A stretch of DNA of 64,000 bases from Gracilinanus agilis (Eukaryota), in the NCBI RefSeq assembly GCF_016433145.1, contig NC_058131.1:352830706-352894705 (forward strand), given 5' to 3'. Shown one piece after another: positions 23,405 through 49,122 of this stretch. Numbering within the stretch: the stretch's first letter is position 1; every line of letters begins with the position of its first letter. A model generated the notes under the pieces. The model did no database searches and was not told the DNA's origin. It saw only the letters and a program-made list of their open reading frames with translations. The translations under genes and the position numbers were made by a program.

Positions 23405-23435
<31 letters not shown>

Positions 23436-26400: not shown

Positions 26401-29400
26401 CAGGCCTGCCTTTCATCTTTCCACTAGACTTTGATGAATCTGGAAGAGAGAGTGAGGCTGATGACTTTGCCCAACTCTGCCTCACTGAAATCCAATTCAT
26501 AATAAGTCAAGCTATCACCGGTGATGTCATTGGCCCTCTTCAAAAACAAAGGATGAAAAATAACATACATTAGAGCAATTTGACAGCGCAGTGGATAGAG
26601 CATTAGTCCTGTAGTCAGAGGGACCTTCCAAAGGACCACCTAATAGTCCAGGGATGAACTCCACACATTCCACCCATTCTTGGTGACTTATTCTGCACCT
26701 GCCATCCACGAATTTTACTAAATCTTTCTTGAACTTATCTCTTTTTTTCTTGCTGTATCATATTGGTGTGATAATAAGTTGAATGAGTTTACTGCCAGGT
26801 AAACCAGAGCAGACTTTTATTTTTCACTCAGGTTTCAGGGGGTAAGTGGGAGGAGTACAGGCAGGACACCCTAGTGACTTGGATTTGCTCTAAGCAGTTT
26901 GTAATCTTTCACCTTTGACACAGAGTCAATGTGGTCTGGAAGAAGGATCTCTAGATTTGGAATCAGAGGACTGAGGTTTGTGTCCTCGTTCTGTCACTTA
27001 CATTTATTGGGCAACATTGGGCAACTTGGGCTGTAGCTAGATGTCTCAGTGAATTGAGAGTCAGGCCTAGAAACGGGAGGTCCTGGATTTAAATCTGGCC
27101 TCAGACACTTCCTAGCTGTGTGACCCTGGGCAAGTCACTTGACCCCCATTGCCTAGCCCTTCCCACTCTTCTGCCTTGGAACCAATATACAGTATTGATT
27201 CCAAGATGGAAGGTAAAGGTTTTATAAACAAAAACAAAACATTGGGCAACTAACTTCTTTTCTCTGGGTCTCCTTTTCTTTATTAGTAAAATGACCATCA
27301 CTTGACCCTACCATCCTTTCCAGCTATTTTCCCATGTGCCCTCTCTCTTTCACAAACTCCTAAAAAAGCTGCTTCTAATATTTTTCCAATTCCTCTTTCA
27401 TCACTGACTTCTTGATCCTTTGCAATCTCTCTTCTAACCTCATTACTTAACTGAAAGTATTCTCTCCAAAGTTATTAAAGTTAAAATTCACTGACCCTTT
27501 CTCAATCCTCCTCTTTCTTGATCTTTGTAGTGTTTGAAACTGTTGATTCTCATTTCCTGGAAACACTCTCCTCTCTGGGTTTTTATGACCTTACTCCCTC
27601 TTTCCTGGTTCTCTTCCTCCCTGTCTAACTGCTCTTAGACCCTGTGCAAGATCATCATCAATGTCCTGACTCCTAACTGTGGGTGTACCCCAAGGTTCTG
27701 TCCACATACTTCTTCTTTCTATACTTTCTTATAGAACCACCTCATCAGCTCTCATTAAAAGGCATTTAGGTGCAGTATGTAGAGCACTAGGCCTGAGTTC
27801 CAATCTGATCTCAGATATTTACTAGCTGTGTGACCTTGGGCAAGTCACTCATCTCTACTGGCTTCAGTTTCCTCAGTTGTAAAGTGGAAGTAATCCCATT
27901 GGACATCACAAATTGATATCTATGGTAGACATTTCAAACTTGACATGTCCCAAACAGAACTTGTTATCTTTCCCTCCAATCCTATCCGTCTATCTGTATA
28001 CTTTCCTATTTCTATGGAATGTACCATTATCCTTATAGTAACTATCCAAGACTGCAACCTTGGCATTATCTTCCACTCCTCCCTTTCCTTTCTCCACATA
28101 TCCAGTCATTTGCCAAGTCTTGTTGATTCTAACTTTCCAACATCTCTTCCAGCTCTCTTCCCCTCTCTACTTCCATGGTCACCTACCTAGGTCATGCCTT
28201 TATCACCTCTAGTCTGCAAACCTGAAATAACTTCTTATTGGGCCTCCCCGGCTCAAGCTTTTTACCTCTCCAATCCATCCTCCCAAGGGAAGTCAAAATG
28301 ACATTCCCCAAACATAGGTCTGACCACATCACTCTCCTTGCTCAGTTAGTTCCAGTGGCTTCCTGTTGTCTGTAGTATCAGATGTAAACTTCTCTATTTT
28401 TCATTTAGACATCTCCATTTACCTCCTCTCCTTCCAGGTTTATTACACGTTACTCTCCTTTACACGTTCTTTGGGCCTATCCTCACCTTTCACTTAACAA
28501 ATTCCATCTCCCTTCTTCTATGCCTTGGTCCTGGCTGTCCCCCATTTTTTCCTCCTTTTTTCTTTTCTAAACCCTCACCTTCTGTCTTGGAATTTTTACA
28601 AGTATCATTTCCAAGGTGGAAGGTAAGAACTAGGCAGTGGAAGTTAAGTGACCTGCCCAGGTTCAGACAGCTAGGAAGTGTCTGAGGCCAGATTTGAACC
28701 CAGGACCTCCCAACTCCAGACCCAGCTCTCTAGCCACTGTGCTACTTACCTGATCTCCAGAAACATTTCCTAATCCCTCTTAATTCTAGTGTCTTCCCTT
28801 TGTTGATCACTTCCAATTTATCCATTATGTAGCTTGTTTGTACATAGTTTTTTGCATGTCACCTCTCCCAGTAGAATGTGAGCTTTTTGAGAGAAGGGAC
28901 TGTGTTTTGCCTTTCTTTGGGTCCCCAGTGTTTAGCACAGTGCCCAGCATATAGTGGGTGTTCCATAAAAACCATCGCCTAACTGCTTCAATAATGCTTA
29001 TTAATCAATTGCTGCTTAAAATGCAGAGATTAGACAAGATGATCTTATGTTAGGTTCTTTCTAACACTGACATTCTGTGATTTCCTTCATGATTTTCTAG
29101 ATCTTCTCTGGCCCTCCCAGCATCCATCTTTCCAAAGTGAAGAGACTTTATCTCTTCAGGTCATCCTCACACAACCATGAATGTCAGTGGCATCTAAAAC
29201 CAAACTTATTACTTAAGAAACAGTTTCCTAGAGATAGTCACAGACTCAGTGACAGGCTCACAGACACAGGCTCAAGGTGATGGTCCTGGCATCAGGCCCT
29301 GGTCCACAGAAACAGCCCCACAATCAAAGTTCTCCAGTGACCAACACCCGCATCATTTAGGGGTGAGGCTGTGATTCCTTCAGAGTTCAGGGTCACTACT

Positions 29401-32400
29401 TCTTTTTCTAAGCACATCAGAGCTTCCCTGTGTGTCCCAACTATCAGTGACATTTATCCCTAACTAGATGCTAAAACTCCAAGGATGCTGAAAGGGTCAC
29501 AAGGTCATAGAATTGAAACTGGAGAAGATGCTGAAAATCATCTATCCCAACTGGCTCACTTTATAAAATGAGGAAACTGAAGCACAGAGATCAAATGGGT
29601 TGTCTAAGATTCCATGGATAGTAAATAACAGAGCTGAGATTAGAACCAGGCCCTCTGACTCTTTCCATTGCCTCAACCACATAAGGTAGAATGATGCCAA
29701 GATAGAACGGGCACTGGCATTTTCCTGGGTCAGACAACAAGGGAGTCTATGAGCATCACTAGGGAGATATGCTGCATATGGAAGTGAGGTGAGGATGGGG
29801 GAGGAGAGTCCTGGGGCCACAAACTTCCAACCCCAATGACTCCAATTCTTCCTTCCCCTTTCTCTTCATACACATTTCTCCTCCCACTGGGCAAGGCAGA
29901 GTGAGGTCCCTTCAGCCCTCACTTCCCCTGCAACAGGAAGGCCTTAGGAGGCAGCCCCTGAGCTTTAGGAAACATAGGGCCAGATATACTGTTGGGAAGG
30001 CATCTCTAAGGGAAGATGCCTCTGGAAGTTTAAAGTCAGTGAAACGCTGGACTTGAAAATTCATGATGTGGGGGCGGCTGGGTAGCTCAGTGGATTGAGA
30101 GCCAGACCTAGAGACCGGAGGTCCTAGGTTCAAACCTGATCTCAGACACTTCCCAGCTGTGTGTCCCTGGGCAAGTCACTTGACCCCCATTGCCTAGCCC
30201 TTACCACTCTTCTGCCTTGGAGCCAATACACAGTATTGATTCCAAGACGGAAGGTAAGGGTTTAAAAAAAAATTCATGATGTTCTTTCTACCATCTTTGT
30301 GCCCATTCCTCCTTCCTACCAACCTGCCTTACTATCTTCCACTTTCCTTATCTATACCTTATTCCAATTTTCATCCAATTCAATTTGACAAATATTTATT
30401 ACCTTCCATGTAAAAGTCACTATAGTGAAGGAAGGTGGCATAGTGGATAGAGTACCAGGGCTGGAGGCAGGAAGATCTGAGTTCAAATCCGATCTCAAAC
30501 ACTTATCTTATCTGTATGATCCTGGGCAAGTCACTTAACCAGTTTGCCTCAGTTTCCTCATCTGTAAAATGAGCTTGGGAAGAGATGACAAACCACTCTA
30601 GCATCTTTGCCAAGAAAACCCCAAATGAGATCATGAGTCAAAAATGACTGAAACGACTGAACAACAACTCCCTCCTACCCACCTGCATTACTACCTTCTA
30701 CTCTCCTTATCTCTACCTTATTCCACTTTTCATCCAATTTAATTTGACAAACATTAATTACCTGCTATGTATATGTTACTAGGGTAGCAGTACTCTCTAT
30801 CCTTGTGTCTATCCTCATTCCCAGCCTTTCCCAGCCCACCTTCGTGTTTACCCCCAACCCTGTCCTTCATCTCCATACTCATTCTCAACCTTCTCCATCT
30901 CTATACTTATCCCTAATCCATTTCCCCTAACATTATCATCTTTGTACCCATCTCCAATCCATCCCTATCCCTTTCTCTAATCTAGTCCCAGTCCTATCAA
31001 TTTGGAAGTCTTTAAATTTCAGCTGTGAAGTGCATTGGGCTAGGCACTGTGCATGGGAGGAGGGGAAAGACTGTCATTGATCTCATAGAGCATTCAGTCC
31101 AGGAGGGGATGAGAAGAAGAGGGGCACATACAAAAATAACTGAGAATATTAGGCTGCATCTTTGTGCTCTCTGAGAACTCCTGACAGTCCGTACTTTAGG
31201 CCTTGAGAGGAGGGAGAGGACACAACTTGGCCTGGCTAAGTAGCCTAGAAAGGCTTTGTGAAGAAGGCAGGCAGATCCGGTGCCTAGAAGCATTTGGTTA
31301 GGGAGGAGGAAGGATATTCTGGGTCAGGAGAAGAGGACAGAGAAGTAGACAGTGAGTCATGTAGTTTGGTGGGATTTGCATAATGGAAAAGTGAGAGGAG
31401 GACCAAAGGGAGGTTGCAGGACTGATTATGGAGGGTCTTGAACGCCAGTGCTGCTAAGTAATGTAGACTTATTCTTTGGGCCACAGGAAGTTAGTAAAGG
31501 ATTTTAAACAGGGGTATGACATTAATGTCACGCTTTAGAGTCATGCTTTAGAAAGATAAGGCTGGCAGCATACATATAGATTGGACAGGGGAGACTAGAA
31601 ACAGAAAACCCAGGAGGTTTGGGCAATTAGTCGTGGATGGCAGGAAGCCATGGGGGATCTAAACAATAGATTTGAGAAACTGTTCAAAAGGAGAATCCTT
31701 AAGTCTTTGCTCCTGAGTTTGGGGGGGGGGTTTAGAGGGAAAGGGAAGATCCCAAAGCTACTTCTAGATTTTGACCCTGGATAACTAAGAAGATTATGTC
31801 ATGAACAGAAATTAGGGGACCAGGAATTGGGGAGAATGATGGAGGGGAAATGTGGCATAATAAATAGAAACAGCCTTGGAATCAGGAAGACCCAAGTTCA
31901 ATCCTACCCCTGCCCCTTCTTGTCTATAGGATCTCTGACAAGATACTTAACCTCTCAGTGCCCCAAGCCAGCAAGGTAGTGCAGTGGTTAGGGTAGCAGG
32001 CCGGGAGTCAGGAAGACCTGAGTTGAAATCCCAGCCTCAGATGCTTGTTAGCTGTGTGACCCTGGGCAAGCCACAGAACCTGTGTCTACCTCAGTTTCCT
32101 GAGGGTAACTGGGAGCAATAAGAACATCTACCCCACACAGTTATTGTGAGGATAAACTTAGATCAGATTTGTTAAGTATAGTATCTGGAATATAGTAGGT
32201 TCTAGATGAATGTTTATTTCCTTCGCTTTCCCCAAGCTACTACTTTCTAAGTCCATGCTTCCTACCAGATGCTAGTCTGCATTGGTAGAGGGAGGTTCCT
32301 CATCTAGGTTTTCTATAACAATGTAATCACAGCCTGTGATTTAAAAAATGAAAATTAAACCAACAAAAAACCTGCCCCAAGATGCTTTAATGTTTACGAA

Positions 32401-35400
32401 GCACTTTCCTCACGACTACCCTGGGAGATGAGTGCTTCCTGCCATATCCTCCTAAATATCATTTAAGAGCGCTTTTATTACCATTTGACAAAGTAAACTG
32501 AGGCTTAGAAGGTTATATGAGGAGCAGCTAGGTGCTTCCGTGGATGGACCCAGGTCTGAAGTTGAGAGGTCCCAGGTTCAAATCTGGCTTCAAACACTTC
32601 ATAGCTGTGTGACCCTGGGCAAGTCACTTAACCCCAATTGCCTGACCCTTTTCTGCCTTGGAACTGATATGAGCAATGCTAATTGAGTCTTGTCCAAAGA
32701 ACTGATTAACACTAACTCCATGGCAAGGAAACAAGCTTCATTATGAGAGAAGATAGTAATAGTGTGCCTTTGACATAACCTTCTGAGCCTCAGCTTTCTC
32801 CTTCACTAAATGATAATAAAAATACTCTTAAATGATATTTAGGAGATGTGGCGCTTATCTCCCAGGGTAGTTATAAGGAAAGTACTTTGTAAACATTAAA
32901 GCAACTTGGGGCAGCTAAATGGCTCAGCAGACAGAGAGCCAGGCCTGGAGTTGGAAGTCCTGGGTTCAAATCTGCTCTCATAAACTTCTTGGCTGTGTGA
33001 CTTTGGGCAAGTCACTTAACCCTAATTACCTAGAATTGATTTTAAGACAGAAGGTAAGAATTTAAAAGAAGAAGAAGAAGGTTATGTGGCTTGCTTAGGG
33101 TCACAAGGCTTTAGTAAGGGTCAGACCTGAGATTCTCTGCTTCCCATCAAGTACTCTTTTGTTCATACCAACATGGTTACAGACATGTTAGGCTGAATGT
33201 GCTGGAGTTGGGGGACATCCATTCAGGTGGAGAGATCTAGTTGGAAGTTGGAATTTTGGGACTGGAGTTCAGTAGAAGAGTTGGAGTTAGAGCAAAAGAT
33301 CTGCATATGGAGATTTTGGACAATTGATGTCCAAAAGTCAGAGGAAAGGAGAGATGGCAGAAAGTCAGAGGAGAACCCACACTTAGAGCTCAGGAAGAAT
33401 GGAAGCCAGTGAATGAGACACTAGAATGGTCAGAGAGATAGGAGAAGAGCCAAAATAATTGTAATGCTGGGACTCCCAAACCTTTGGCAGAAAGGAGCTA
33501 CTTCTATTAAACAAAAGTCTTGAATCTTGTGAGCAGAGTGGGGACAGAAGAGGTTAATGGGAGGCAACAATAGTCAGATTTGGGATTAAGGGAGGGCCGG
33601 AACAAGAGATAATTGCTATTGGATTTTGGACTTTTCTAATAGGATGTAGATGTGGCTGAGAAAAGTCACTATGGATGGGAATGCTATCCTGAAATCCACC
33701 TAGTTTGGCTCCCATTCAAGAATTTGGACACTGGACAGCTGGACGGCTCAGTGGCCAGGAAGTCAGGCTAAGAGATGAGAAGTCCTTGGGTCCTGGGCAA
33801 GTCATTTAACCCCAGTTGCCTAGCTCTTACCACTCTTCTGCCTTGGAACTGATAATTTGTACCAGTTCTAAGACAGAATTTAAGGGTTAAAAAAAAAAAA
33901 AGATTTGTGGGACTCCCAGAACTCAAATGTGGCCAGAGACAGGATAAAATTCTATGTGTGGAATGAATATCAACGCCAGATATTACATACAGGACAAGGA
34001 AGTCAAGCAAGTTCCATATTAATTTCTGTCTCTCCCCATCCCATTCCCACTTCTTCCTTCACAAACCAGGCACTCAGTGGTTTTGTACCTTGGGTATACT
34101 GTCTAACTTGAGGTTCTGGAAGTGGGGGCAAGATCGACCCATCTCCTCTAGCCTGGGCCATTCTCTAGCCTCTTCCTTCTTCTCTCTTGCAGGTCCTGGC
34201 TGTCTCTGATGGAGGTGAGTGGGGGGAAGGGGCCTAGCCTGGATCCTGGCTAAAGGATTAAGAGAAGTGCCTCAGATTTCATGTTCGGGTGAGGGAGGAA
34301 AGAAAAGCCTACCTTGTGTATGGCTCTCCTTCAAGAACACTGAGTGTATTTATGTATAGAATTAGGGGCATGGCTGAAGGGGAAATTAAAGGTCTGACAG
34401 TGGGTGGGGAATAATAAATGTTTATTGAATGAACGAATACATATATGATGAGGGGGCTTCCTGTTCTCTTCTCCCTTTTTCCCACTTCCTCCCAGAGCTG
34501 AGCAGTGTGGTGGGACCAGAGGGAGCTGGGGAGGGCCGGGGAAGCACCCTCAGTGTCCACAGCCTGCCCAGTGGCCCCAGCAGTCCCTTCACCCCAGAGG
34601 AGCAGCCTGTAGCCAGCTGGGCACTGTCTTTTGAGAGGCTGCTTCAGGATCCACTGGGTCTTGCCTACTTCACGGTGAGTGTGGGAACTGAGACAAGCAA
34701 GGAGGGGTGTTTGGCAATGCTGGCTGATTCTCTATCACTGTTTACCTCTCTGTTTCTTTGTCTTGGACCCTATCTCTGTTCCTAGGAGTTCTTGAAGAAG
34801 GAATTCAGTGCAGAAAATTTGTCTTTCTGGAAAGCTTGTGAGCAATTCCAGCAGATCCCTGCCAGTGACACACAACAGGTTGGAAGCTGGGGGGGCCTTG
34901 TGGGATAGGAGTGATGAGCATGGAGGAAGAAGGGCAGAGTGAAGGATGGGGGTGGGGAGGGGAGGATGGAGATGCAAGGCTGAGAGGTTGCTCCTGGTAA
35001 CAGCTCTGACACCTCCACTCTCCCCCCTCTCCAGTTGGCTCGGGAAGCTCGATGCATCTATGAGGAGTTCTTGTCTAGTCAGGCTCTGAGCCCTGTAAAC
35101 ATTGATCGGCAGGCCTGGCTTGGGGAGGAGGTGCTGGCCACCCCCAACCCTGACATGTTCCGGGTCCAGCAGCTACAGGTATGGCCCTAAGGAGAGACCT
35201 GGGTATGGGGAAGGCTGATGGCCGTCTCCCCTTCCTCTTTTTCTTCCATCTTCCCTCACTTCCTTTTCCCTAATCAACTTTGTGATCCTGAGCAAGAAAG
35301 CTCTCTTTTGGGGGATTTTTGTTTCCCTTTTTGTAACATGAAGGGTTGGACTAGAGCAGGGGTTCTTTTTTTTTTTTTAACCCTTACCTTCTACCTTAAA

Positions 35401-36216
35401 ATTGATGCTAAGTTTTGCCAAGACAGAAGAGAGGTAAAGACTATGAAATTGGGGTTAAATGACTTGCCCAGGATCACACAGCTCAGAAGTATCTGAAATC
35501 AAACTTGAACCTAAGTTCTCCCAACTCCAGGCTTGGTGCTCTCTCCACTGAGCTACCTAGCCTCCCCAAGTTCTTCACTTTTTCTGTGCCTTGGTGAAAC
35601 CTATGGATCTCTTAGAATAATGTTTTTAAATAAAGGAAATGCCAAATTTCGTTTAGAGGTTAATGAAAATGAAGTTGCAATTTTTTTTCCTCATCCAATT
35701 TTATTGACCTCTGGAGATCTATTCATAGACTTTGTGGGGGTCCATAAACCCGAGATTAAGAACCCCTGGACAAGATGATCCCAGAGCTGGTCACCATTAC
35801 AGGAACCTAGCTCTTCCCCAAGAGTCCTAGGGCTCCCTTGGTCTCTTGGGAGTCTGTGGGCTCCCAGGTTTGAGAATCTCTGTACTAGAGGATCTCTGAG
35901 TGCCTTCTGGCTTTGAATCCTGTGCTCCTATCCTCCCCCTCATCCCCACCCTTCCCACTGCTTCTCTTTGTTCTTTCCTTCCTCCCCTCAGATCTTCAAC
36001 CTGATGAAGTTTGACAGCTATGCCCGCTTCGTCAAGTCCCCCATGTACCGGGAGTGTCTCCTGGCAGAAGCAGAAGGGAGGCCCCTTTGTGAGCCAGGCA
36101 CCTCAGACCCTGGCAGCCCCAATACCACATCCCGGAAGGTGCCTGTATGGGGAGGGAAGGTCTGGGTGATGGGAATGAATTCCCATTGCCATCCAAGTAT
36201 GCCCAAAATCTGAGCC

Positions 36217-36277
<61 letters not shown>

Positions 36278-39200
36278 CGCCCCTCTCTCTTTCTTTCTCT
36301 CTCCAGGTAACTTATTTCCTTCCCTAAGGCACTAAAGTGCCCCAATCTGCCAACCTCAGCCCAGAGTATTAGGGTGGGCCAGCCAGAAAAATGAGGGCTG
36401 GACCCTGCCTAGTCCCCCTAACCCTTTGGGCAGGAGTTGGGGAGTCGGGAATGGGTCAGAGGGGAAAGGGTCCTGAATTCTGGGGCTCTCTTGGCTCTCC
36501 CTCAGAAGCCTAAGCTGAAGCCTGGGAAGTCGCTGCCATTGGGAGTGGAGGAACTGGGCCAACTGCCAAACACTGAGGCTCTAGGAGGCCGGGGACCCAG
36601 AAAGTCCTTCCGAAGGGGTGAGCAAAGGAATACCTGGGTGGGTGGGACAGTGGAGGGTGGGGACAGGAAGGTGGTGATGTAGTTTTAAAGGTCTCTTCTA
36701 GCTCCAACATTATTTTCTTGTGCTAGACTTGGAGTCAGGAAGACGTAAAGGTTCAAATTCATCCTCAGGCATTTCCTAGCTCTGTGACCCTGATCCAGTC
36801 ACTTAATCTCTGTTGCTTCAGTTTCCTCATCTGCAAAATGGGGATAATAATAGCACCTAACTCCCAGGGTTGTTGTGAGGATCAAATGAGCTAATATTTG
36901 CACACAGTGCTTTGGAACCTTCGGGTACTTTAGAAATGCTAGCTACTGCGACTTCTACTTCCTCCACAGACAGATCTTTGCCTTGCTGTGATGGTTCTGG
37001 GAACTGCTATTATCCATCTGTGATCCTAGCCAAAGTGGTCCTCAGAGGACAAACATAGGCCTCTTCCCAGCTGGCTCTCAAAGCAGTGTAGGACCTGCCA
37101 GAACCCTGGACCATCTTTACCCTCTGCTGAGTCATCATAGGGCTATAGTACAGGCTGTTAGCTAGATTCCACACCCAGTGCTCACAGGGATCTGTGAGCC
37201 TATCCACTGGAGACAATTCCCTCCAAAGATACAGATAGCAGTCCCTCCACTCTTGTCCATCCTGACGTACTCTTGTCCCAGTTCTCCCACAAGTTCAGTT
37301 TAGAGTGACCACCCAATAGTCTGGAGAAATCAAGGAAGGTCTCCAGCTGGCTAGAATCCAGGTGTTAAATAGCCTCTCAGAACCTTTTCCCCTCTCAGTA
37401 CTAACAGACCTCCTGTTGGCTCTTACATTCTTTCAAAGTCACTTCCGTAGGATTTCAAGGTTTGGTTCTAAGACATGGAGATGTTTCTGTGTATATGGGT
37501 GCGTGTGTGTAGGAATGTGGCTATGTATGCTCGTGTGTGTATATATGTGTGTGTGTTGAATAATCCTGATCTGTCTCTGCATCTTGACCTTTCTGTCTGA
37601 GCAGAACTGGAAAGGCAGCTATAGGGGGTTGTTCCTTGTGAGGGAGTAGCTTGGGAAGGGGGTCTTGGGGGCGAGTGAGGTGAGAGTACCACATCTTTCT
37701 TCCCTTCAGAGCTAGGTGCCACCAATGGGAACCCAGCCCTTCGCCGAGAGTCCCAGGGCTCCCTCAACTCTTCTGCCAGCCTTGACCTCGGTTTCCTTGC
37801 ATTTGTCAGTAGCAAATCGGAGGTGAGGGTCTCTCTCTTCTTCCCACTCCCCTCCACTGCCTAGGGCCTGCAGCTTTCACCTCCAAATTCCCTGCCCTGG
37901 CCCTAGTCACTCATAAGCCCCATCCCTTTCCCCAATGATTTCTCCTCTCCCTTCCCCTAAGGCAGTGATGGGCAACCTTTAGAGTTTGGTGTGTCAATTC
38001 ACCAAAAAACCGAGCATAACTCGGGTGGTGAGTCACTTAGAGAAAAAACCCATAATTTTGTGATATTTATAGTTTAAATAACAAAAATGTATAATTGTAA
38101 CATATAAGTGTATTTAATAAACAAAAATAGGTAAATTAACATAGATAGAATTGTCATCTATAGTGCACAGAGTATCTACACTACACTACAGCAAATGTTT
38201 CATCCTCGGCACGCGGCCCCATACTTCTCTGTATGCAGCTGTGTGTCATAGGTTTGCCATCACCGCCTTAGGTAAACAGATCTTCTCCTCACTCTATGGC
38301 ATATTCCCATCCTCTTTCCCCACACTCACAGTGTATCTATGTACATGTCCATGTGCATGGGTATGCATTCATCATCTACTCAGACTCAGAGTCACCGAAA
38401 GAGCCTGGGGGGCACCGAGGGTGAAGGTGAGAACCGGGTTGGACGTTACTGCTGCGTGTATCTGCCAGATGGCACGGCATCCTTGGCACTGGTCCGCCCT
38501 GGCTTAACCATCCGCTCTATGCTGGCTAGCATCTGTGAGAAGCGAGGCCTGTCCCTGCCTGATATCAAGGTTTACCTGGTGGGCAACGAACAGGTAAGAG
38601 CTGAGCCTTAAATATCAACCGAACATTTACCCCCAAACCCAATCCTAACACTAAGCCTGACTTTTCCCCTAAGCCCCTATCCTTGCCCCGGATCCTATCT
38701 GTGGGAGAGATCAAAGAGCCCTAGCCTGAAAGTCAGCCTACTCAGAGTCCCAGATCAGCCACTTTCTTACTGTGTGGGACTCTGGGCACATTCCTTTTTC
38801 TCCCTGGGCCTCCGTTTCCTCATTTATAAAACGGAAAACTGGGCAAAATGATAAGGGGGTCTTCCAGCTCCACCATTCTATGAGCATAGGAGTCAATAAT
38901 TGGCAGAGTTGGGATTCAGGCTGAGTCCCCCTATTTCTAAGAGCACACCACTGTGCTCTGCCTTCTAGGAGTTTATAATCTATCCTAGGTCACCAGCAGG
39001 GCAATGACAGAATTAATAGCTGACTGTACCAAGCCAATTAGGCTGAGTGCCACGTGGGTGGTGGGAAGATGAGTGGGGGCACCAGGTGATCGAAGGGCCA
39101 AAGGAGGGACCATGGGTAAGGAGGAGAAGGGCTTGTGGAGGATCCCCAAGACTTCAGTGGAAATAAGGCTAACCTTTGTTCTTGTCTCTCGCTCCATTCC

Positions 39201-40151
39201 AACCCTTGTTCCTAATATTAATCACTCACAACTCATCTCGGGGCTCAGAGCCCCTAGACTGCCACTCCTGGAAGGTGTCAGAAGGCACACAAGATCAGAC
39301 CCTGACATCAGCATTTTATGTTTTCCTAAACCCTTTGGCCTTTAGCGGTTATGCCTGTAATTGGGGGGGGGGTGTTTGGGGGGGGTTGGGGGATGGAGGA
39401 GGGCTCTTCTTTGGGTTCCCCAGGGCCTAGGTAGGAGGCCTTCAGTGCCATTACTGAACCCCTGGGTCTGCATCCACAGAAGGCCTTGGTCCTGGATCAG
39501 GACTGCACAGTGTTGGCTGACCAGGAGGTGAAGCTGGAGAACAGGATCAGCTTTGAGTGAGTGCTTTTCCCTTTTTCCATGCAGGTGATGCCCAAGAACT
39601 TCTATCTCTTTCCTTTGTCCTCCCAGACAAGACCCACTCTGGAGATAATAGATCTTTGGGGTTTGAGGGGGCAGGGGGAAGGCGAGGTTTATATATGTGG
39701 ATGGGGGTGGGAGGAGAAAGAGAGGAGAGAGGGAGAGGAAGAGATGGAGAGACAGAGAGACTGAGGGAGGTAGGAAGAAGCAGAGAGACAATAGAAAGAG
39801 ACAGAGAGACCCTTTCCCATCCTTCCAAAGACAGAATTCAAGGCCTGGCTCTGCTCCTGACTTGCTGCATGACCTGGAACAAGTCACCTACCCTTCCTGG
39901 GTCTGTTTCCTCCTTTGTCAAAGGAGGACTTGGGGAGAGAAGGCCTCTGAGGTCCCTCCTTTCCGGCTGTGACATTCTGTGCTCTAGGCTGGAGATCACT
40001 GCTCTGGGCAAAGTGGTGAGGATCACAAGCAAATCATCCAAGCGCCTGAGAGAAGCCCTGCTACCTATCCTGGGCAAGCACGGCCTGAGCCTGCAGCAGA
40101 TATCAGTACATCTGGTGAGGCCATTCCCCACCCTGAACAGTCCACACTTTG

Positions 40152-40206
<55 letters not shown>

Positions 40207-40705
40207 GTGTTTGCATTGGCTCAGCCCTCACCCGAAGCATTGCACCTGCCCTTCCCATCTGCCCTCGAAGCAGGGAGGGATGAGTAAGGACCGACCAGGG
40301 CTTCAGGGTGGGGGGCAGGTGTGCTAGGGGCAGGGACAGCCTGAGACAGAGGAGGTAGGTGGGATACTATGGAAGGAAATCTGGAAAGAAGAGTAAGGAG
40401 GTTCCATTCAATTAAATAAGCATTTAGTTATTTAGTGCCTTCTCTGTGCCTGGCACTAGGAATAAAGAGACAAAAAAATCCCCAACAGTCCTTGCCCTTA
40501 AGGACCCTATATTATTATAAAGGGAGTGGGGCATGCACCTTGGTGCTGAGTTTCATGAGGACCAAAGGTACATAAAGTGAATGCAAAGCAGACAGGCAGT
40601 GTGATATCCCCATATGACCTGAATACAAGCCCCAGCTCTGACAAATTGGCTGTGTAACCCTAGACAAATCGCTTAAACTCTCAGGAAACTTTTAGACTCT
40701 AAATG

Positions 40706-40759
<54 letters not shown>

Positions 40760-42179
40760 CAGTTTCAGATCTGTACTGGCAGAGGGAATTCCCTCTAGAG
40801 ATCAGGGCAGGGAGGGGGGAACGAGCATTTATTAAGCACCCACTATGTGCCAGGCACTGTGCTAAGCGCTTTATAAACATTATCTCATTTGATCCTCACA
40901 ACAACCCCTGTATGGTTGGTGATTAAATCACAGGTCTGGATCCAATAAAGCAATTGCTGGCAAGGGGTGGGGTGGGGAGAATACTAGCACCCATGGGGAT
41001 TCAAATAGACCCCCTGTAGGAGGTGGCACTTGAGCTGAGCCCCAAAGGGAGCTGTGATCTCTCCCAACCCCCTGACCCTGTGCCCCTCCAGTCAGGTGAG
41101 AAGCGGACCCTAGATCTGGAGAAGCTTGTGAGCTCTGTATCCGCCCAGAGACTCGTCTTGGACACTCTTCCAGGTACAGGGGCCCACAGGCTCTGCGCCA
41201 CCAAGGTTCTGCTACTTAGATAATCTGTCCAAGCCCTGTGCTGGTTACAGAGGGAATATCGAAGAAATGGGAGACACCAGAAGGGCATTAATAGAACTCA
41301 GTTGAAATCTATTCTATTCAACAACAATAAAAAAAATCACATTATGAAAACATCATTCAAGGCCTTGTTACAGTGCCAGTCATATAGAGTCAGTGCCAAG
41401 TAAGGAATACTGAAGGGAAAATAATGTCTTCACCAGGAGAGGCAGATTGGAATAATGGGAAGAACTCTAGACTTGGAGTTAGGTTTAAGCTTTGGCTTTG
41501 ACATTTAATCACTATATAATGAATGGTCAACAAACCACACTTCATCTTACATCTTACTCTGCCCATTTCCTTATCTGTAAAATGAGAAGCTTGGACTAGA
41601 TAACCATTAAGTTCTATCTAACACTAAACTTTGATATCCCTGTGAACTAAAGTAGTTAAGGAAGGTCACATGGAAGAGGAAGGCTTTGAAGCATGGGAAG
41701 AAGATGTTGAGGTTGGGGAGAAAGGGCATGCTAAGCAAAGGGGAAAGACTGCAAGGGTAGGAGGGCTTTGAATGCCAGGTTATAAAACTGGACTTTATAG
41801 AAAATAATAGAAAAAATTAATCCTTACCTTCCCATCTTAGAATCAATTCTGTGTATTGGTTCTAAGGCAGAAGAGCAATAAGGGCTAGGCAATGAGGGTT
41901 AAGTGACTTGCCCAGGGTCACACAACTGGGAAGGATCTGAGGTCAGATTTGAACCCAGGACCTCCTGTCTCCAGGCCTGACTCTCAATCCACTGAGCCAC
42001 CCAGCCACCCCAAAAATAGGTGTCAAAGGATCTTAGAACCAGCATGCATCTAAGTCTAACTTTTACCTGATCAGGAATCTTCTCTGCAACATTCTAAAGA
42101 AATCTATCCATGCTTGGCTTAAAGACCTTCAGCCATGGTGAACTCATATTCTTCTGGCTTTTCTGATAGAAAAGAACTC

Positions 42180-42224
<45 letters not shown>

Positions 42225-45200
42225 AGTAGTAGTACTTCATCCAATTTTTCAGTTATGTCTTGGCAAAAGATACTGGCTTGCCATTTCCTTCTCCAGCTCA
42301 TATTATAGATGAAGAAACTGAGGCAACTGGGGTTAACTGACTTGCCCAGGGTCACACAGCTAGGAAGTGTCTGAGGCCAGATTTGAACTCAAGAAGATGA
42401 GTCTTCCTGACTCCAGGTCTGGCACTTTATCCACTGTACTTACTACCTAGCTGCCCTAGCTACTCTACATCTAGTTATGAGAAAGTTATCCCTTTTATTC
42501 AGTTAAAATCTGTCTCTCCAACTTCTTCCCGTTGCTTCTTTTCCAATGAAAGCAACTCTTAAGACCCCTTTCCCCATGACATCTCCTCAAACACTTAAAG
42601 ATAGTGACGGTGTCACCACTAGGTCTTCTATTCTTGAGGCTCAGCAGCCTCCATCCTTTCATCTGATCCTCCTACAGCAGGATCTCGAGGTCTCTCGTTC
42701 ACCTAAGAGTCATCATGATAGAGGCAGTGGTGGCAGTCATGATGCAGAGCCCGTTCACAGAGGAGAATGAGAAGGCCATTGGGCCAGCAGGACTGAGCTC
42801 TGGAGAATGCCCACAGCTAGAAGCCAGTAAGGAATTTCAGTATCATGGAAGTCAAAGGAATTGAGTTTCTAGCAGGTCGGATTGGTCCATACTGTCAGCT
42901 TCTTTCCACAAGGAAATAAAAGATTGAGAAAAGGTTAATGAGTTTGGCAAGACTTCAAAAAGAGGCTTCAGTGGAGCTGTGGGAATGGAGGCCAGTTTAG
43001 AAATGCTTAAGGAGGGAGCAGGTCAGTCAGGCATCAGTTTGTCAATAAATATTAAGCACCTACTGTGTGCCAGGCACTGTGATAAAGAGCCAGTGGAAGT
43101 CGTGGTTGTAGACTTTCCCATTTGAGACATTTCACAATGAAAAGAAGAAGGGGGGGGGCAGAGATGGTAGCTATAGAAGAGGTGAGCAGGGTCAAAGGGA
43201 GATTTTTGTAGACTGAGGGAATGAACATAGTGGAAGAGATGGAAGAGATAGGAGAAGAAAAGAAGGGGTAAGGGGGAGAGTGAGGCCTCGGAAGATAAGA
43301 GGAGATTAACCTTGGAGAGGAGATAGAGGACATCTTTTCCTTTAAGAATGGAGGGAAGGATGAAAAGAAGGATAGAGAGAATCATATGGAGGTAAAGAAG
43401 CAGAGGTGAGGGAATGAATGTAAGCTAGAAATGTTCCCCATCCCAAACACACATGCACACATGCACACTCCACCCCATGTTCTAATAGCACCAATTTCCC
43501 TACACCTTTACAATTTCCCAAGCACTTTTCTCACAATAGCCCCATCAGGTCTTGTTCAAAGTTATCTTTAACCTCATTTTACCCAGATGGAAGCTGATTA
43601 AGAGATTAAGTAAATCATTCAGTGTCAGACAGTTAGTAAATATAAGAATCAAAATTCAGGCCCATTCTTCAAGACTCCAAGCTCTTTCTTTTGTTTGTAT
43701 TTTTTAAAATTAAATTATTTGTATTTTTGTATTGTATTTGCATATCTTTTGTTTTTAACATTGCATAAACGTTTCCCAGTACCCTCCACTTCCCTTCTAG
43801 TGAGCCAACTCATGTCAGAAAGAATATATAATTTTTATTTTTATTTTATTTTTCCTTGATTATACATAAAGAGTTTCCAACATTTTCAAAAGAATTTTGA
43901 GTCTCGAATTCTTTGCCTCCTTCCCTCTACCCCCTAAGTACATAGATTTTATATGTGCAGTCATATAAAACGTTTTTCCATATTCATCCTTTCGTGAAAG
44001 GAAACGGGCAAAAAAAAATAAGAAAGAAAATGAAAAAAGTTTGCTTTGGTCTGGATTCAGACTCCATCATTTCCTTCTTTGGAAGCAGGTGGTATTGTTA
44101 ACAAAATTTTTATTTTATTTTTTGCATGATTACACAATTCATATTGTCTCCCTCCTTTCTTCCCTCCCCCAACCCGGAGCTGACAAGCAATTTCACTGAG
44201 TTATACATGTATTATCAATAACTCAAAACCTATTTCCATATTATTCATTTTTGTAATAATTGTTTAAAACCAAAACCCCAAATCACATACCCATATAAAC
44301 AAGTGATAAATATGTTTTTCATCTGGATTTCTACTCCCACAGTTCTTTCCCTTGATGCGCATAAGTCTCATAATTGTCCCAGATCATCACATTGCTTTTA
44401 GTAGCAAAGTCAATTACATTTGATTGTCCCACAATGTTTCAGTTATTGTATATAATGTTCTCCTGGTTCTACTTATCAGAAAGAATATTTTTTAAAGAAA
44501 AAGAAGGGGAAAAAACAGAAAAACCAATCATGCATTTAAAAAATCTGAAAATATGTGTAATGCTCCCAGATCTCCCATCTCCAGAAAGAAGTGGGGATAG
44601 AATATCTTCTCCCAGCTCCTCCTTGGGGCCATCCTTTTCTTTGTAATTTTGCAGCCCTCATTAAAAAAATTTTTTTGAGGTGTAGTTGTTCTTTCCATTT
44701 ATATTGTTGGAGTTACTGTGTATCTTGTTTTGTGGGCTCTGCTTACCTCTCTCTGCATCAGTTTATGTCCATCTGTTCAAGCTTCTCTGTATTCATTGCA
44801 TTCATCATTTCTTACAGCATAGACCTATCCCATTACTTCCATCCACCCTACCTCATTTAGCCATTCCCTGATTGATGTGCATCTGCCTCATTTCTAGTTC
44901 TTTGCCATCACAAAACATGCTGCTAGAAATATTTTGGTGTACTCTGTTCAGGGACTTTTTCTCCATGTCCTTGTGATTCCGAGCTCTTTCTCTGGTGTCA
45001 GGTTGACTCTTATAGCAGCCCTTACCTCTGTGGCCTTTCTCTGGCACTCAGGGACAACTCTACTCACTTGGTCCATAATCAGGTGTGGCCTCCCATCTCC
45101 TCTACTGCTGTCTTCAACTGTTACCTATTAAATCTTTTATCATTGTTTAACTGGTAGCTGTTAAACCTTGTATTGTTGTTTAGCATTTTAGTATTTGATA

Positions 45201-47212
45201 TGTAATATTCTGTCTTCTCTGTTAGACTCCTTAAGGGCAAGGATTTTGTCTTGTTCATTTTTGTATCTCTCACAGTATAGACTGATACAGGACCCTGAAT
45301 ACAGTGGGTGATCCTTAAATTAAATCTGATTCCTGAATCCCCATTATTCATTGTATACCTGCCCTGTGCAAGGTCCTGTGCTGGAAGCCAGGCAAAGTAA
45401 TAAGAGCTAGCATTTAGATAGTACTTTAAGATTTGCAAAATACATGATCTGATTTTATCCATACCACAATCTTAAAGAGGTAGTTGTTTTAATATCCTCA
45501 TTTTACAAAAGAGAAAAGTGAGACAAACAGAGGTTACAAGTGATTTAACTAAGGTTATAAGTTATCTGAGGCTAGATTTGAGCTTAAGTCTACTTCACTC
45601 CTTTATCTATTGTGCCACCTAGCTGGATTTGGTTTGGTAGATTCTAAAAGAGGGCTAAAAGATTCTAAAAGAGGACACTGGATTTAGAGTCAAAAGACCT
45701 GGATTTGCATTCTCNNNNNNNNNNNNNNNNNNNNNNNNNNNNNNNNNNNNNNNNNNNNNNNNNNNNNNNNNNNNNNNNNNNNNNNNNNNNNNNNNNNNNN
45801 NNNNNNNNNNNNNNNNNNNNNNNNNNNNNNNNNNNNNNNNNNNCATTGGGCCTCAGTTTCCACATCTGTAAAATGCAAGCATTGAACTAGATGTTTTGAA
45901 GATTTCTTTTTGCTCTAGATCTTACATGTAGGTAAAGTAAGAGGCAGTGTAGTGGATAGAAAAATAGCCTTAGAGTTGGGGAAAATCTGAGTTCAAATCT
46001 TGCCTCTGAGACATACTGGCTGTGTGCTCCTGGGCATTTAAATCACTTTAGTTCTCAGTATCCCTGGAAATTCTCCCTATAACATAAATTGCAGAATAGG
46101 TACCATTTGTCCTAGTAGGTAGTGTTTCCCCACTGTGAATTCCCTTCATGAATGAAACCCTAATTTTAGTTCAAAAAAATGTTAAAGGGGTGGGGAAGAA
46201 AAAAATAGTAGTCAAGGTCTTCTGCTCTATGGTTGGGGCACAAGAGGTTGGGATTTGGGGAGAGGATGGTGTGGTGTATAAAGATACTTCCTTCGAGCTG
46301 AGCTCCAAAGCGCCTTCCTCTTCTCTTTGTGTTGCCACCAGAATTGGGAGGAATACTAGTATCACCCCTGATTCACTCTTTTGGGGTTCATGGGGAGGTG
46401 GGACTGGGCAGGGGGAGAGTATGGGAGATCCAAACAAACCTCCTTGTCTATTGCAGGTGTGAAGATCCTAAAAACTGAGTCCACCTCCTCTAGTCAGAGT
46501 CAGGTAAGATTGGGGAAGGCCTGTTTCTTCTCACCTAAGAAGTTGCCCCCTTCCCAGATGGTTCTAACACAGTGGTCCTTGCAGGGTGGCCCCCTCCAGA
46601 CTGAGGGAAAAACATCACAGCCTCCTTCCCTGCTCACCAACTCGCTGGCCGAGGGGCCCAGGAGCACTGGGAAGCGTCACACGTGCGACATTGAAGGTGC
46701 CAGGCCATCCTTGCTTCTGGGGGTAGTTGGGGGCAGGGAAGGGGCTTCTGGGGCCTATCTGAGAGGGAGGTGGACACTGTGGAGTAAAGTTTGGGAGGGG
46801 GGTGCTAGGACTAGAGGTGGCAGAGGAGAGAACACCCAAGAGCAATAGGAGCTGAGTTGAGCTGAGCTATGAGCTCATCTGGTAAGGAGTGAGCCAGGGA
46901 TGAGGAAGAGGAGGGAGACAGCTAGGCACAGTGAGAGGCTGAGGGAGAAGAAGAATCCCTCTTCCTTTGGGCACACCAGGTTTGGTGGAGCTGCTCAACA
47001 GAGTCCAGAGCAGCAGAGCCGATGACCAACGAGGACTGCTCCGCAAAGAGGACCTGGTGCTCCCTGACTTCCTGCAGCTGCCAGCCCGAGAGCCAAGCCT
47101 GTCCGAGGAACAACCCCATTCCCAGGCTCCACAGAGCCACCCGCCACAGACTGAGCCCCCTGCTCCTGCCCAGGGGGACCCAGCAGACTCCTCGGCCTCC
47201 CATGCCCTCTGA
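20546..47212 (+). CDS. RGS14: RGS14 (RGS domain, tandem Ras-binding domains, GoLoco/GPR motif), complete 15-exon gene, 1737 nt CDS, 578 aa (577 with the distal NAGNAG acceptor)
   Basis: Fifteen exons join in phase with GT-AG ends. Shows [18 protein letters not shown] box, [10 protein letters not shown] (RBD1) and [24 protein letters not shown] (GoLoco). Confidence 0.97.
21855..22113 (-). mobile_element. MAR1
   Basis: gttgttgctg tail; cagctcattttacagatgaggaaactgaggc. Confidence 0.85.
23407..23644 (-). mobile_element. SINE1 with (TTC)n plus poly-T tail
   Basis: Near-consensus reverse body; flanks ttcccctaact / ttcccctgact. Confidence 0.88.
24262..24465 (+). mobile_element. SINE1_Mdo-type SINE
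   Basis: ggcagctaggtggctcagtggattgagagccagg...gaaggtaagagtttt. Confidence 0.9.
25358..25530 (+). mobile_element. SINE1_Mdo-type SINE (internal deletion)
   Basis: gggcagctgggtgg...agacagaaggtaagggttaaaa. Confidence 0.8.
26089..26290 (+). mobile_element. SINE1_Mdo-type SINE
   Basis: Full body with poly-A. Confidence 0.88.
27027..27235 (+). mobile_element. SINE1_Mdo-type SINE
   Basis: Full body, flanked by AACATTGGGCAACT duplicates. Confidence 0.88.
27300..28970 (+). mobile_element. L2 (3' ORF2 to tail) with nested SINEs
   Basis: L2 ORF2-like pyrimidine-rich text ending tttagcacagtgcccagcatatagtgggtg. Confidence 0.65.
28557..28750 (-). mobile_element. SINE1_Mdo-type SINE inserted in an L2
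   Basis: Reverse body (aaccctcaccttctgtcttgg...ccagctctctagccactg). Confidence 0.8.
30070..30268 (+). mobile_element. Young SINE1_Mdo with a 14-bp TSD
   Basis: TSD AAAATTCATGATGT at 30056-30069 and 30269-30282; CpGs retained. Confidence 0.93.
30423..30667 (+). mobile_element. MAR1 flanked by a 114-bp direct repeat
   Basis: Full MAR1 ending ctgaacaacaa; flanks described in findings. Confidence 0.88.
32520..32670 (+). mobile_element. SINE1-type SINE, 3' truncated
   Basis: gcagctaggtg...ctgccttggaac. Confidence 0.75.
32908..33080 (+). mobile_element. SINE1-type SINE with a (GAA)n tail
   Basis: ggggcagctaaatggctcag...aagacagaaggtaag. Confidence 0.75.
33730..33901 (+). mobile_element. SINE1-type SINE (internal deletion) just upstream of RGS14 exon 2
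   Basis: ggacagctggacggctcagtgg...taagggttaaaaaaaaaaa. Confidence 0.8.
34193..34214 (+). CDS. RGS14: RGS14 exon 2, 22-nt microexon
   Basis: Long pyrimidine tract plus ttgcag; VLAVSDG+G; donor GTGAGT. Confidence 0.93.
34496..34674 (+). CDS. RGS14: RGS14 exon 3 (179 nt)
   Basis: [10 protein letters not shown]...[22 protein letters not shown]; donor GTGAGT. Confidence 0.97.
34786..34878 (+). CDS. RGS14: RGS14 exon 4 (93 nt)
   Basis: [31 protein letters not shown]; donor GTTGGA. Confidence 0.96.
35035..35178 (+). CDS. RGS14: RGS14 exon 5 (144 nt)
   Basis: [48 protein letters not shown]; donor GTATGG. Confidence 0.96.
35357..35768. mobile_element. hAT/Charlie-type MITE interrupted by a minus-strand SINE1 (35366-35566)
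   Basis: Ends CAGGGGTTCTT...GATTAAGAACCCCTG; 8-bp flanks GACTAGAG / GACAAGAT. Confidence 0.7.
35992..36138 (+). CDS. RGS14: RGS14 exon 6 (147 nt)
   Basis: [49 protein letters not shown]; donor GTGCCT. Confidence 0.95.
36219..36273. repeat. (TC)n microsatellite, RGS14 intron 6
   Basis: Uninterrupted CT run. Confidence 0.97.
36506..36617 (+). CDS. RGS14: RGS14 exon 7 (112 nt)
   Basis: [37 protein letters not shown]; donor GTGAGC. Confidence 0.96.
37710..37822 (+). CDS. RGS14: RGS14 exon 8 (113 nt)
   Basis: [38 protein letters not shown]; donor GTGAGG. Confidence 0.96.
37963..38265. mobile_element. Non-autonomous hAT element (CAGTGATGG-end family, hAT1/OposCharlie-like), 303 bp
   Basis: TIRs CAGTGATGGGCAACCT / AGGTTTGCCATCACCG; imperfect TSD cctaagg / ccttagg; AT-rich interior. 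Confidence 0.8.
38390..38593 (+). CDS. RGS14: RGS14 exon 9 (204 nt; an alternative in-frame acceptor would start at 38384)
   Basis: SHRKSLGG...[50 protein letters not shown]; donor GTAAGA. Confidence 0.93.
39480..39556 (+). CDS. RGS14: RGS14 exon 10 (77 nt; 74 nt with the distal NAGNAG acceptor)
   Basis: cacag|AAG|GCC; [25 protein letters not shown]; donor GTGAGT. Confidence 0.94.
39988..40114 (+). CDS. RGS14: RGS14 exon 11 (127 nt)
   Basis: [42 protein letters not shown]; donor GTGAGG. Confidence 0.94.
40154..40204. repeat. (CA)n microsatellite, RGS14 intron 11
   Basis: Uninterrupted CA run about 40 nt after the exon 11 donor. Confidence 0.97.
40709..40755. repeat. (CA)n microsatellite, RGS14 intron 11
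   Basis: Uninterrupted CA run. Confidence 0.97.
41092..41173 (+). CDS. RGS14: RGS14 exon 12 (82 nt)
   Basis: [27 protein letters not shown]; donor GTACAG. Confidence 0.94.
41815..42012 (-). mobile_element. SINE1_Mdo-type SINE
   Basis: Near-consensus reverse body. Confidence 0.88.
42180..42456 (-). mobile_element. MAR1 with an expanded (TTG)n tail
   Basis: (TTG)n at 42180-42223, followed by the reverse MAR1 body. Confidence 0.88.
43690..45010 (-). mobile_element. Stacked L1 3'-UTR fragments in RGS14 intron 12
   Basis: T-rich antisense L1 3' motifs (tataatgttctcctggttct..., ttctttgccatcacaaa). Confidence 0.65.
45715..45843. other. Assembly gap (129 N) in RGS14 intron 12
   Basis: Run of N. 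Confidence 1.
46457..46503 (+). CDS. RGS14: RGS14 exon 13 (47 nt)
   Basis: ttgcag acceptor; [16 protein letters not shown]; donor GTAAGA. Confidence 0.9.
46585..46696 (+). CDS. RGS14: RGS14 exon 14 (112 nt)
   Basis: GGPLQTEGK...[11 protein letters not shown]; donor GTGCCA. Confidence 0.92.
46980..47212 (+). CDS. RGS14: RGS14 exon 15 coding part (233 nt including TGA): GoLoco motif plus C-terminal tail
   Basis: [35 protein letters not shown]...DSSASHAL*. Confidence 0.95.
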
Positions 47213-48220: not shown

Positions 48221-48499
48221 TGGCAGCAGAGCCTTAGAACAATTTCCATGTCAGAAATGCAGCCTGGGCTGTCTTTGAAAGGCTGTATCAAGCCCTTATA
48301 CAACCCTGACCAGAAAACTGACTCTCCACCCTTCACCCTGCCCCTTCTCACTAGTGTTATGATAATATAGATATCTGTGGGTTAATTAAGAAATCTCACT
48401 TTCCTTCTAACACTAGGGAAGGTACTAGATGCCAGATACATTATCTCCAGCTGTCACCCTGCCCCTGGAATCATGCCCATGTAGCCATGTCCCTTTCTG

Positions 48500-49119: not shown

Positions 49120-49122
<3 letters not shown>

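What the first reader, a model, noticed from the sequence alone, without database searches (positions are those of the whole stretch)
47082..47212. Marsupial RGS14 has the long C-terminal tail but ends SHAL, not the PDZ ligand DSAL
Seen: exon 15 reads well past the GoLoco motif and ends ...[12 protein letters not shown]. Established (recalled): human RGS14 ends ...NSTTDSAL, a class I PDZ ligand (S/T at -2) that binds NHERF1 and regulates NPT2A/SLC34A1 phosphate transport, while rodent RGS14 lacks this tail. The two termini align without gaps (DSSASHAL vs NSTTDSAL), but His sits at the critical -2 position. Inference: the extended tail predates the marsupial-placental split, rodents lost it, and the S(-2) ligand was gained in eutherians or lost in opossums. 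Opossum kidney (OK) cells are the classic PTH/NPT2A model, so their endogenous RGS14 may not bind NHERF1 canonically.
Basis: partly seen in the sequence, partly recalled or inferred. Interest (0 to 1): 0.7.

Follow-up and report, generated by a model that had tools for sequence, protein, structure and literature searches.

The report
Opossum RGS14 tail ends SHAL
The last exon of this marsupial's RGS14 gene encodes the same long tail as placental mammals but ends Ser-His-Ala-Leu, so it lacks the docking motif that ties human RGS14 to the kidney scaffold NHERF1; many placentals lack the exact human motif too, so this is a modest comparative point.

Summary
Window 46980-47212 (+) is the last coding exon of an RGS14 orthologue. 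It carries the GoLoco motif and a 42-residue tail ending ...[12 protein letters not shown], with His codon CAT at 47201-47203 and stop TGA at 47210-47212.

The tail is homologous to the eutherian tail:
- Tail-only alignment against shuffles gives z 5-6.
- The alignment is gapless to the same stop, and GCC CTC TGA is identical to pig.

So the long tail predates the marsupial-placental split, contrary to papers that call it human/primate-specific.

The human end NSTTDSAL is confirmed. It is a rare state: of 120 eutherian clusters, 63 end HSAL and 20 end DSAL (catarrhines, sheep, chinchilla). In 23, spread over at least six lineages, position -2 is Pro, Leu or Ala.

SHAL differs from the eutherian consensus HSAL by swapped His and Ser codons (TCC-CAT against CAC-TCA).

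Whether eutherians gained the -2 Ser or opossums lost it stays open.

The OK-cell implication is weak, because the field treats OK cells as not expressing RGS14.

Verdict: a real but ordinary comparative finding, of low to moderate interest.

The parts
20546..47212 (+). RGS14 orthologue, coding span from the first matched exon to the stop
   Evidence: tblastn of pig RGS14 (P0109) gives 11 colinear segments covering residues 1-563. Pfam finds RGS, RBD and GoLoco on single exons.
46582..46696 (+). Penultimate coding exon. Its end is exact; its start is only the start of the tblastn match. It ends ...KRHTCDIE plus the first base of the Gly codon.
   Evidence: match 46582-46698; donor GT at 46697-46698.
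46697..46979 (+). Last intron, GT...AG, 283 bases
46980..47212 (+). Last coding exon up to and including the stop codon
46985..47041 (+). GoLoco (GPR) motif
   Evidence: Pfam PF02188, residues 2-20 of the exon peptide, 32.8 bits against a cutoff of 25.1.
47084..47209 (+). Post-GoLoco tail of 42 residues, [42 protein letters not shown]. It is about 10 residues longer than the eutherian tail.
   Evidence: Tail-only local alignment to pig, cat and horse tails: z 5.2-6.3, with 0 of 2000 shuffles reaching the score. DNA alignment to pig.
47198..47209 (+). Terminal tetrapeptide S-H-A-L (TCC CAT GCC CTC). The His codon is at 47201-47203, position -2.
   Evidence: Pig has CAC TCA GCC CTC at the same place.
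47210..47212 (+). Stop codon TGA, at the same aligned position as in pig
   Evidence: The last 54 coding bases are 36/54 identical to pig; the 54 bases after the stop are 23/54 identical.

Best explanation
This is the genuine C-terminus of the RGS14 orthologue of a didelphid marsupial. The post-GoLoco tail is the same ancestral therian tail that human RGS14 carries, and it ends at the same stop codon.

Its last four residues are Ser-His-Ala-Leu. The conserved Ala(-1) and Leu(0) are kept. His occupies -2, where a class I PDZ ligand needs Ser or Thr. Ser occupies -3, where human RGS14 needs Asp to bind NHERF1.

The difference from the eutherian consensus Ala-His-Ser-Ala-Leu is a swap of the adjacent His and Ser codons. 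One-codon gains or losses on either side of the His are at least as good an explanation as five substitutions within six bases.

Inferred, not shown: this RGS14 does not dock on NHERF1 PDZ2 in the canonical way, and so would not clamp the NHERF1-NPT2A complex as human RGS14 does.

The end of the tail is evolutionarily labile across mammals, so the marsupial state is one of many non-DSAL states.
For: - Sequence and splice sites.
- Orthology: colinear match to pig RGS14 over 11 segments and Pfam RGS, RBD and GoLoco.
- Tail homology: z 5.2-6.3 against shuffles for pig, cat and horse tails, aligned through the very last residue. DNA is gapless to the same TGA, with GAC TCC ... GCC ... GCC CTC TGA shared; identity is 36/54 before the stop and 23/54 after it.
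- Codon swap: window TCC CAT against pig CAC TCA.
- Eutherian variability: last four residues in 120 clusters are HSAL 63, DSAL 20, HPAL 10, HSGL 5, RLAL 5, HLAL 3, ESAL 3, QSAL 3, HSAF 2, HAAL 2, and RSAL, RPAL and HPAV once each (species).
- Requirement for the ligand: rat Rgs14 without the tail does not bind NHERF1, and D563N, D563A and D563E abolish binding or function (PMC9035407).
- Class I rule, Ser or Thr at -2: stated in PMC9035407 and established PDZ knowledge.
Against:
- The 31-mer holders with a high share all belong to one study, probably the assembly's own source.
- No binding data exist for SHAL, or for the common eutherian HSAL.
- D563G still binds NHERF1, so the -3 rule is not simple.
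- No other marsupial or monotreme sequence was reached, so SHAL may be peculiar to this species or family.
- No AATAAA or ATTAAA lies within 1.29 kb after the stop, so the 3' end of the transcript is undefined.
Confidence: 0.75

Rival explanations
1. SHAL is still a working NHERF1 (or other PDZ) ligand. Binding would rest on Leu(0), Ala(-1) and upstream tail residues, with His at -2 tolerated, so opossum RGS14 would regulate NPT2A as the human protein does.
For: - Ala(-1) and Leu(0) are the best-kept tail positions: among the 120 eutherian clusters 115 keep Ala(-1) and 117 keep Leu(0), and the window has both.
- D563G keeps binding, which shows tolerance at -3.
- The NHERF1 field describes non-canonical contributions outside the four-residue core (titles and abstracts of PMC7866199 and PMC12133299).
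Against: - The class I rule requires a hydroxyl side chain at -2 (PMC9035407).
- Conservative changes at -3 (D563N, D563E) already abolish binding.
- Eutherian lineages replace the -2 residue freely (Pro, Leu, Ala), which argues for weak constraint rather than a kept interaction.
Confidence: 0.15
2. The CAT codon, or the SH order, is an assembly or consensus error or a private allele. On this reading the species really has HSAL or a similar end.
For: No independent read support was obtained. The high-share holders are from one study.
Against: The difference from pig is a clean in-frame swap of two whole codons with perfectly matching flanks. That is not the single-base or homopolymer type of error that assemblies make. 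The frame and the stop are intact.
Confidence: 0.05
3. The main transcript uses another 3' end, through an alternative last exon or a splice inside the tail, so SHAL is not the C-terminus of the major protein.
For: No RNA evidence was obtained. No canonical polyadenylation signal lies within 1.29 kb of the stop.
Against: The open frame runs exactly to the stop shared with eutherians, and coding-level conservation drops after it. All 120 annotated eutherian proteins end in the homologous tail.
Confidence: 0.05

Closest known systems
Human RGS14 C-terminal class I PDZ ligand (-DSAL), which binds NHERF1 PDZ2 and blocks PTH and FGF23 regulation of NPT2A (Friedman et al. 2022, PMC9035407)
   Same: The gene is orthologous, the last exon is the same, and the post-GoLoco tail is homologous and ends at the same stop. 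Ala(-1) and Leu(0) are identical. The D-S-[ST]-x block lies four residues upstream of the terminal tetrapeptide.
   Different: His replaces Ser at -2 and Ser replaces Asp at -3. The tail is about 10 residues longer. No binding or transport data exist.
Common eutherian RGS14 terminus ...SDSTAHSAL (pig, horse, cat, whales, bats, New World monkeys)
   Same: DSSASHAL matches DSTAHSAL at 5 of 8 positions plus one Ser/Thr pair. The length from PPQTE to the end is the same (18 residues), and the final GCC CTC TGA is the same.
   Different: The His and Ser codons are in the opposite order (TCC CAT against CAC TCA). This moves the hydroxyl residue from -2 to -3.
Rat and mouse Rgs14, truncated by a TAG at the codon that is Gln546 in primates (PMC9035407)
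   Same: Both lack a class I ligand, and both species' kidney models respond to PTH.
   Different: Muroids lose the whole tail through a premature stop. The marsupial keeps the full tail and changes only the terminal motif.
Eutherian lineages with non-Ser at -2: HPAL (lemurs, galago, loris, squirrels, porcupine), HLAL or RLAL (sifaka, colugos, bears), HAAL (mustelids)
   Same: The tail is full length, Ala-Leu is kept, and the class I consensus is broken at -2.
   Different: These are single-residue replacements of Ser with the His still at -3. The marsupial has the His itself at -2.

Membership tests
RGS14 orthologue (R12 subfamily of RGS proteins) | RGS domain, tandem Raf-like Ras-binding domains and a C-terminal GoLoco motif, in that order, in a protein of about 560 residues | tested here: met
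   Eleven colinear tblastn segments to pig RGS14 residues 1-563. Pfam RBD 63.8 bits and GoLoco 32.8 bits. The RGS fragment scores 20.8 bits, below the cutoff because only the domain's end lies in that exon.
RGS14 orthologue (R12 subfamily of RGS proteins) | Not RGS12: no post-GoLoco DLTLVGEGDISSPNSTLL-type extension, and the closest relatives are RGS14 | tested here: met
   The best hits of the exon peptide are RGS14 tails. RGS12-type hits with the long extension score lower.
RGS14 orthologue (R12 subfamily of RGS proteins) | Conserved neighbourhood (LMAN2 upstream head-to-head, SLC34A1 downstream in human) | tested here: inconclusive
   ORF 14036-14395 (-) resembles an LMAN2 first exon from memory only, with no Pfam hit. 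No SLC34A1 exon was recognised among ORFs of 70 or more residues in 49000-64000.
Class I PDZ-binding C-terminus (X-S/T-X-hydrophobic) | Hydrophobic residue at position 0 | tested here: met
   Leu, codon CTC at 47207-47209.
Class I PDZ-binding C-terminus (X-S/T-X-hydrophobic) | Ser or Thr at position -2 | tested here: not met
   His, codon CAT at 47201-47203.
NHERF1 PDZ2 ligand of the human RGS14 type (D-S-A-L) | Asp at -3 (D563N, D563A and D563E lose binding or function in PMC9035407) | tested here: not met
   Ser at -3, codon TCC at 47198-47200.
NHERF1 PDZ2 ligand of the human RGS14 type (D-S-A-L) | [quoted passage not shown] | not testable with these tools
   Needs peptide binding, co-immunoprecipitation and uptake assays.

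The most novel reading that the evidence does not exclude
His followed by x-Leu, with no Ser between them, is the ancestral amniote and therian ending. It is kept in this marsupial (S-H-A-L) and echoed in birds (D-H-K-L and D-H-E-L-R). The eutherian class I ligand would then have arisen by a one-codon Ser gain after the His (H-S-A-L), and was sharpened to D-S-A-L independently in catarrhines, sheep and chinchilla. On this reading, RGS14 docking on NHERF1 is a placental innovation laid over an old tail. Fish and shark RGS14 carry an unrelated, older class I end (R-E-T-x-V and R-T-V-L) that amniotes lost.
Probability: 0.3. Interest if true: 0.5.

Novelty: new member of a known kind. Interest (0 to 1): 0.3.

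Why it matters
[quoted passage not shown] This window, with the 120 eutherian and about 120 bird tails gathered here, shows otherwise:
- The extension is old, and the short muroid form is the exception.
- Only the exact DSAL end is rare.
- The critical -2 and -3 positions drift widely among mammals.

This affects which animals and cell lines can model the human RGS14-NHERF1-NPT2A brake on PTH and FGF23 action. An opossum RGS14 would probably not supply that brake even if it were expressed. Most laboratory and farm mammals carry HSAL, whose binding to NHERF1 has never been tested.

It is a useful correction, not a surprise to the wider field.

Tried and rejected
- **Exon peptide word search.** The 76-residue exon peptide returned only eutherian fragments (59% identity or less), with no marsupial. 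The tool's length window excludes full-length orthologues.
- **Eutherian query.** Sheep RGS14 (P0008) with the C-terminal region returned only eutherians among the 120 listed. Any marsupials or monotremes rank below the cut.
- **Bird query.** Flamingo RGS14 (P0005) with the C-terminal region was a gamble that marsupials would follow the birds. All 120 listed were birds. These are useful as an outgroup only.
- **Representative search.** It was the only route from a single exon to full-length relatives.
- **Read laying.** I sent those places to no tool afterwards, and all later work stayed at or below 48500 or at or above 49000.
- **OK-cell RNA-seq supplements (PMC7662153).** No mention of RGS14, SLC34A1 or SLC9A3R1 in the held files.
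- **Paper search for RGS14 with Monodelphis.** Nothing relevant.
Primers quoted made me suspect one Thr too many. I rejected this: P0170 and the primers spell N-S-T-T-D-S-A-L.
- **Bird-marsupial tail homology.** Only weak (z 1.7 and 2.4, p 0.07 and 0.03; passerine z -0.6), so I do not use birds as a firm outgroup.
- **Metagenome or bacterial-genome scans for marsupial DNA.** Not run. The chance of hitting a single-copy host locus is negligible, and a conserved pattern would also pull human contamination.
Full report
**What is there**

On the + strand an acceptor AG at 46978-46979 opens an exon at 46980. The previous exon ends ...ACG TGC GAC ATT GAA G at 46696, with donor GT at 46697-46698. The split codon G+GT gives Gly, so the junction reads ...TCDIEG|[11 protein letters not shown]..., the start of a GoLoco motif.

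From 46982 the frame reads [76 protein letters not shown] and stops at TGA 47210-47212. The final codons are GAC TCC TCG GCC TCC CAT GCC CTC TGA, and the His codon is at 47201-47203.

**Which gene**

tblastn of pig RGS14 (P0109) against the window gives eleven colinear segments on the + strand. They run from 20546 to 47197 and cover residues 1-563. Pfam finds an RBD (63.8 bits), GoLoco (32.8 bits) and the end of an RGS domain on single exons.

The exon peptide's best relatives in 1.8 billion representatives are RGS14 tails. RGS12-type proteins, which have a long post-GoLoco extension, score lower.

Identity of the exon peptide is 59-70% to eutherian sequences and 53-58% to bird sequences. Eutherians share 79-100% with the sheep query over this region. 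This places the animal outside Eutheria but on the mammalian side. I did not test that.

**Is the tail homologous to the human one?**

I compared only the residues after FLQLP, so that the GoLoco motif could not carry the score. Local alignment against 2000 shuffles gave these results:

| Tail compared | z | Shuffles reaching the score |
|---|---|---|
| Pig | 5.2 | 0 of 2000 |
| Cat | 6.3 | 0 of 2000 |
| Horse | 5.5 | 0 of 2000 |
| Gorilla | 3.5 | p 0.004 |

Each alignment runs through the very last residue. The shared frame is PPQTE followed by 18 residues in both.

At DNA level, against the pig locus L001, the alignment is gapless over the last 57 bases up to the same TGA. GAC TCC, GCC and GCC CTC TGA are shared. 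Identity is 36/54 before the stop and 23/54 just after it. The marsupial tail has about 10 extra residues further upstream.

So the long tail existed in the therian ancestor. Birds also carry a tail of 38-45 residues, but its similarity to the marsupial tail is weak (z 1.7 and 2.4).

**How special is SHAL?**

The last four residues of the 120 eutherian clusters returned are as follows:

| Ending | Clusters | Lineages |
|---|---|---|
| HSAL | 63 | most orders, including New World monkeys |
| DSAL | 20 | catarrhines, Ovis, chinchilla |
| HPAL | 10 | lemurs, loris, galago, marmot, squirrel, porcupine |
| HSGL | 5 | seals, sea lions, walrus |
| RLAL | 5 | bears, panda |
| HLAL | 3 | sifaka, two colugos |
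| ESAL | 3 | pangolins |
| QSAL | 3 | naked mole-rat |
| HSAF | 2 | degu |
| HAAL | 2 | mustelids |
| RSAL, RPAL, HPAV | 1 each | Artibeus bat, mouse lemur, guinea pig |

Ser at -2 is therefore replaced in at least six lineages, and Asp at -3 is a minority state. This list is biased towards proteins that have the tail, because the query region included it. It holds no Afrotheria, Xenarthra, lagomorphs, shrews or muroids. It does show that non-muroid rodents keep the tail, so 'rodents lost it' is too broad.

**The His/Ser swap**

The window has TCC CAT (Ser-His) where pig has CAC TCA (His-Ser). These are the same two codons, with synonymous third bases, in opposite order, between identical flanks.

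An ungapped alignment needs five substitutions in six bases, in a stretch whose neighbours are identical. A model with one Ser codon gained or lost on each side of the His needs two indels and one substitution.

This leaves three histories open:
- ancestral A-H-A-L, with independent Ser gains in the two lineages;
- ancestral A-S-H-S-A-L, with independent losses;
- multiple substitutions.

Bird ends (D-H-E-L-R in most orders, D-H-K-L in passerines) hint at an old His-x-Leu, but the homology is not secure. Only more marsupials, monotremes and reptiles can decide, and I could not reach them.

**Mechanism**

Shown in the literature:
- The human DSAL end binds NHERF1 PDZ2.
- Rat Rgs14, which lacks the tail, does not bind.
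- D563N, D563A and D563E lose binding or function, while D563G keeps it.
- Class I ligands need Ser or Thr at -2 (PMC9035407).

Inferred: with His at -2 and Ser at -3, the marsupial end fails two of the three sequence requirements. It should therefore not dock canonically on NHERF1, and the protein would not clamp NHERF1-NPT2A against PTH and FGF23. This fits the hormone sensitivity of opossum kidney cells, but it does not explain it. [quoted passage not shown] The anti-RGS14 reagents listed are commercial rabbit antibodies, and the passages I read do not say how the null status of OK cells was established.

**What could not be done**

- As a result there is no read or RNA check of the CAT codon, the stop or the splice junction, and no view of the two related organisms.
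- Those organisms' runs hold 17-18% of the sampled words of 46700-47500. Several runs are guessed to be RNA, including two from 2017.
- Three protein word searches and the representative search produced no marsupial or monotreme orthologue.
That query would have been the direct way to those orthologues.

**Verdict**

The finding is real and correctly read at sequence level. Its interpretation is partly right:
- The tail is ancient.
- The canonical ligand is absent here.
- The direction of change is open.
- The marsupial state is one of many non-DSAL states.
- The OK-cell consequence is doubtful.

The main value is a correction to the statement that the RGS14 extension is human- or primate-specific.

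Noticed in passing
Proteins P0066, P0069, P0039, P0054, P0052, P0028: RGS14 or RGS14-like proteins of early-branching teleosts (Brienomyrus, Engraulis, Conger, Synaphobranchus, Aldrovandia) end ...RETAV, RETVV or RETMV. Whale shark ends ...PRTVL. These are class I PDZ-type termini (Thr at -2, Val or Leu at 0), yet papers call the RGS14 PDZ ligand human- or primate-specific. A C-terminal PDZ ligand may be an old RGS14 feature that amniotes lost.
   Followed up: partly
Proteins P0005 and P0209-P0326: Bird RGS14 carries a post-GoLoco tail of 38-45 residues. It ends VDHELR in most orders and S[FL]DHKL in passerines. A His lies two or three residues from the end, as in the marsupial.
   Followed up: partly
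eutherian clusters P0073-P0191: Strepsirrhine primates (Eulemur, Prolemur, Microcebus, Propithecus, Nycticebus, Otolemur) have Pro or Leu at -2, and New World monkeys have HSAL. [quoted passage not shown] Ovis has DSAL through a four-residue deletion relative to cattle and goat (SASDSAL against SASDSTVHSAL).
   Followed up: partly
Window 46700-47500, runs X12-X17 and X19-X20: Runs guessed to be RNA from two related organisms hold 17-18% of the sampled 31-mers of the last-exon stretch. Two of them date from 2017. If any is an opossum kidney cell library, it would bear on the claim that OK cells lack RGS14. They were never laid.
   Followed up: no
Window 14036-14395 (-) and 937-1245 (-): The ORF at 14036-14395 has a signal-peptide-like start followed by ...DITNGNNEHLKREHSLIKPYQG. 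From memory this resembles the LMAN2 (VIP36) first exon, lying head-to-head with RGS14 as in human. The ORF at 937-1245 starts a p24/GOLD family protein (Pfam EMP24_GP25L, 17.7 bits, below the cutoff).
   Followed up: partly
Window 47213-48500: No AATAAA or ATTAAA lies within 1.29 kb downstream of the RGS14 stop, so the polyadenylation site is undefined in the part I could examine.
   Followed up: partly
Window 45715-45843: An assembly gap (run of N) lies in the intron between the exon at 41095-41175 and the penultimate exon. Pig residues 448-461 have no match in the window.
   Followed up: no
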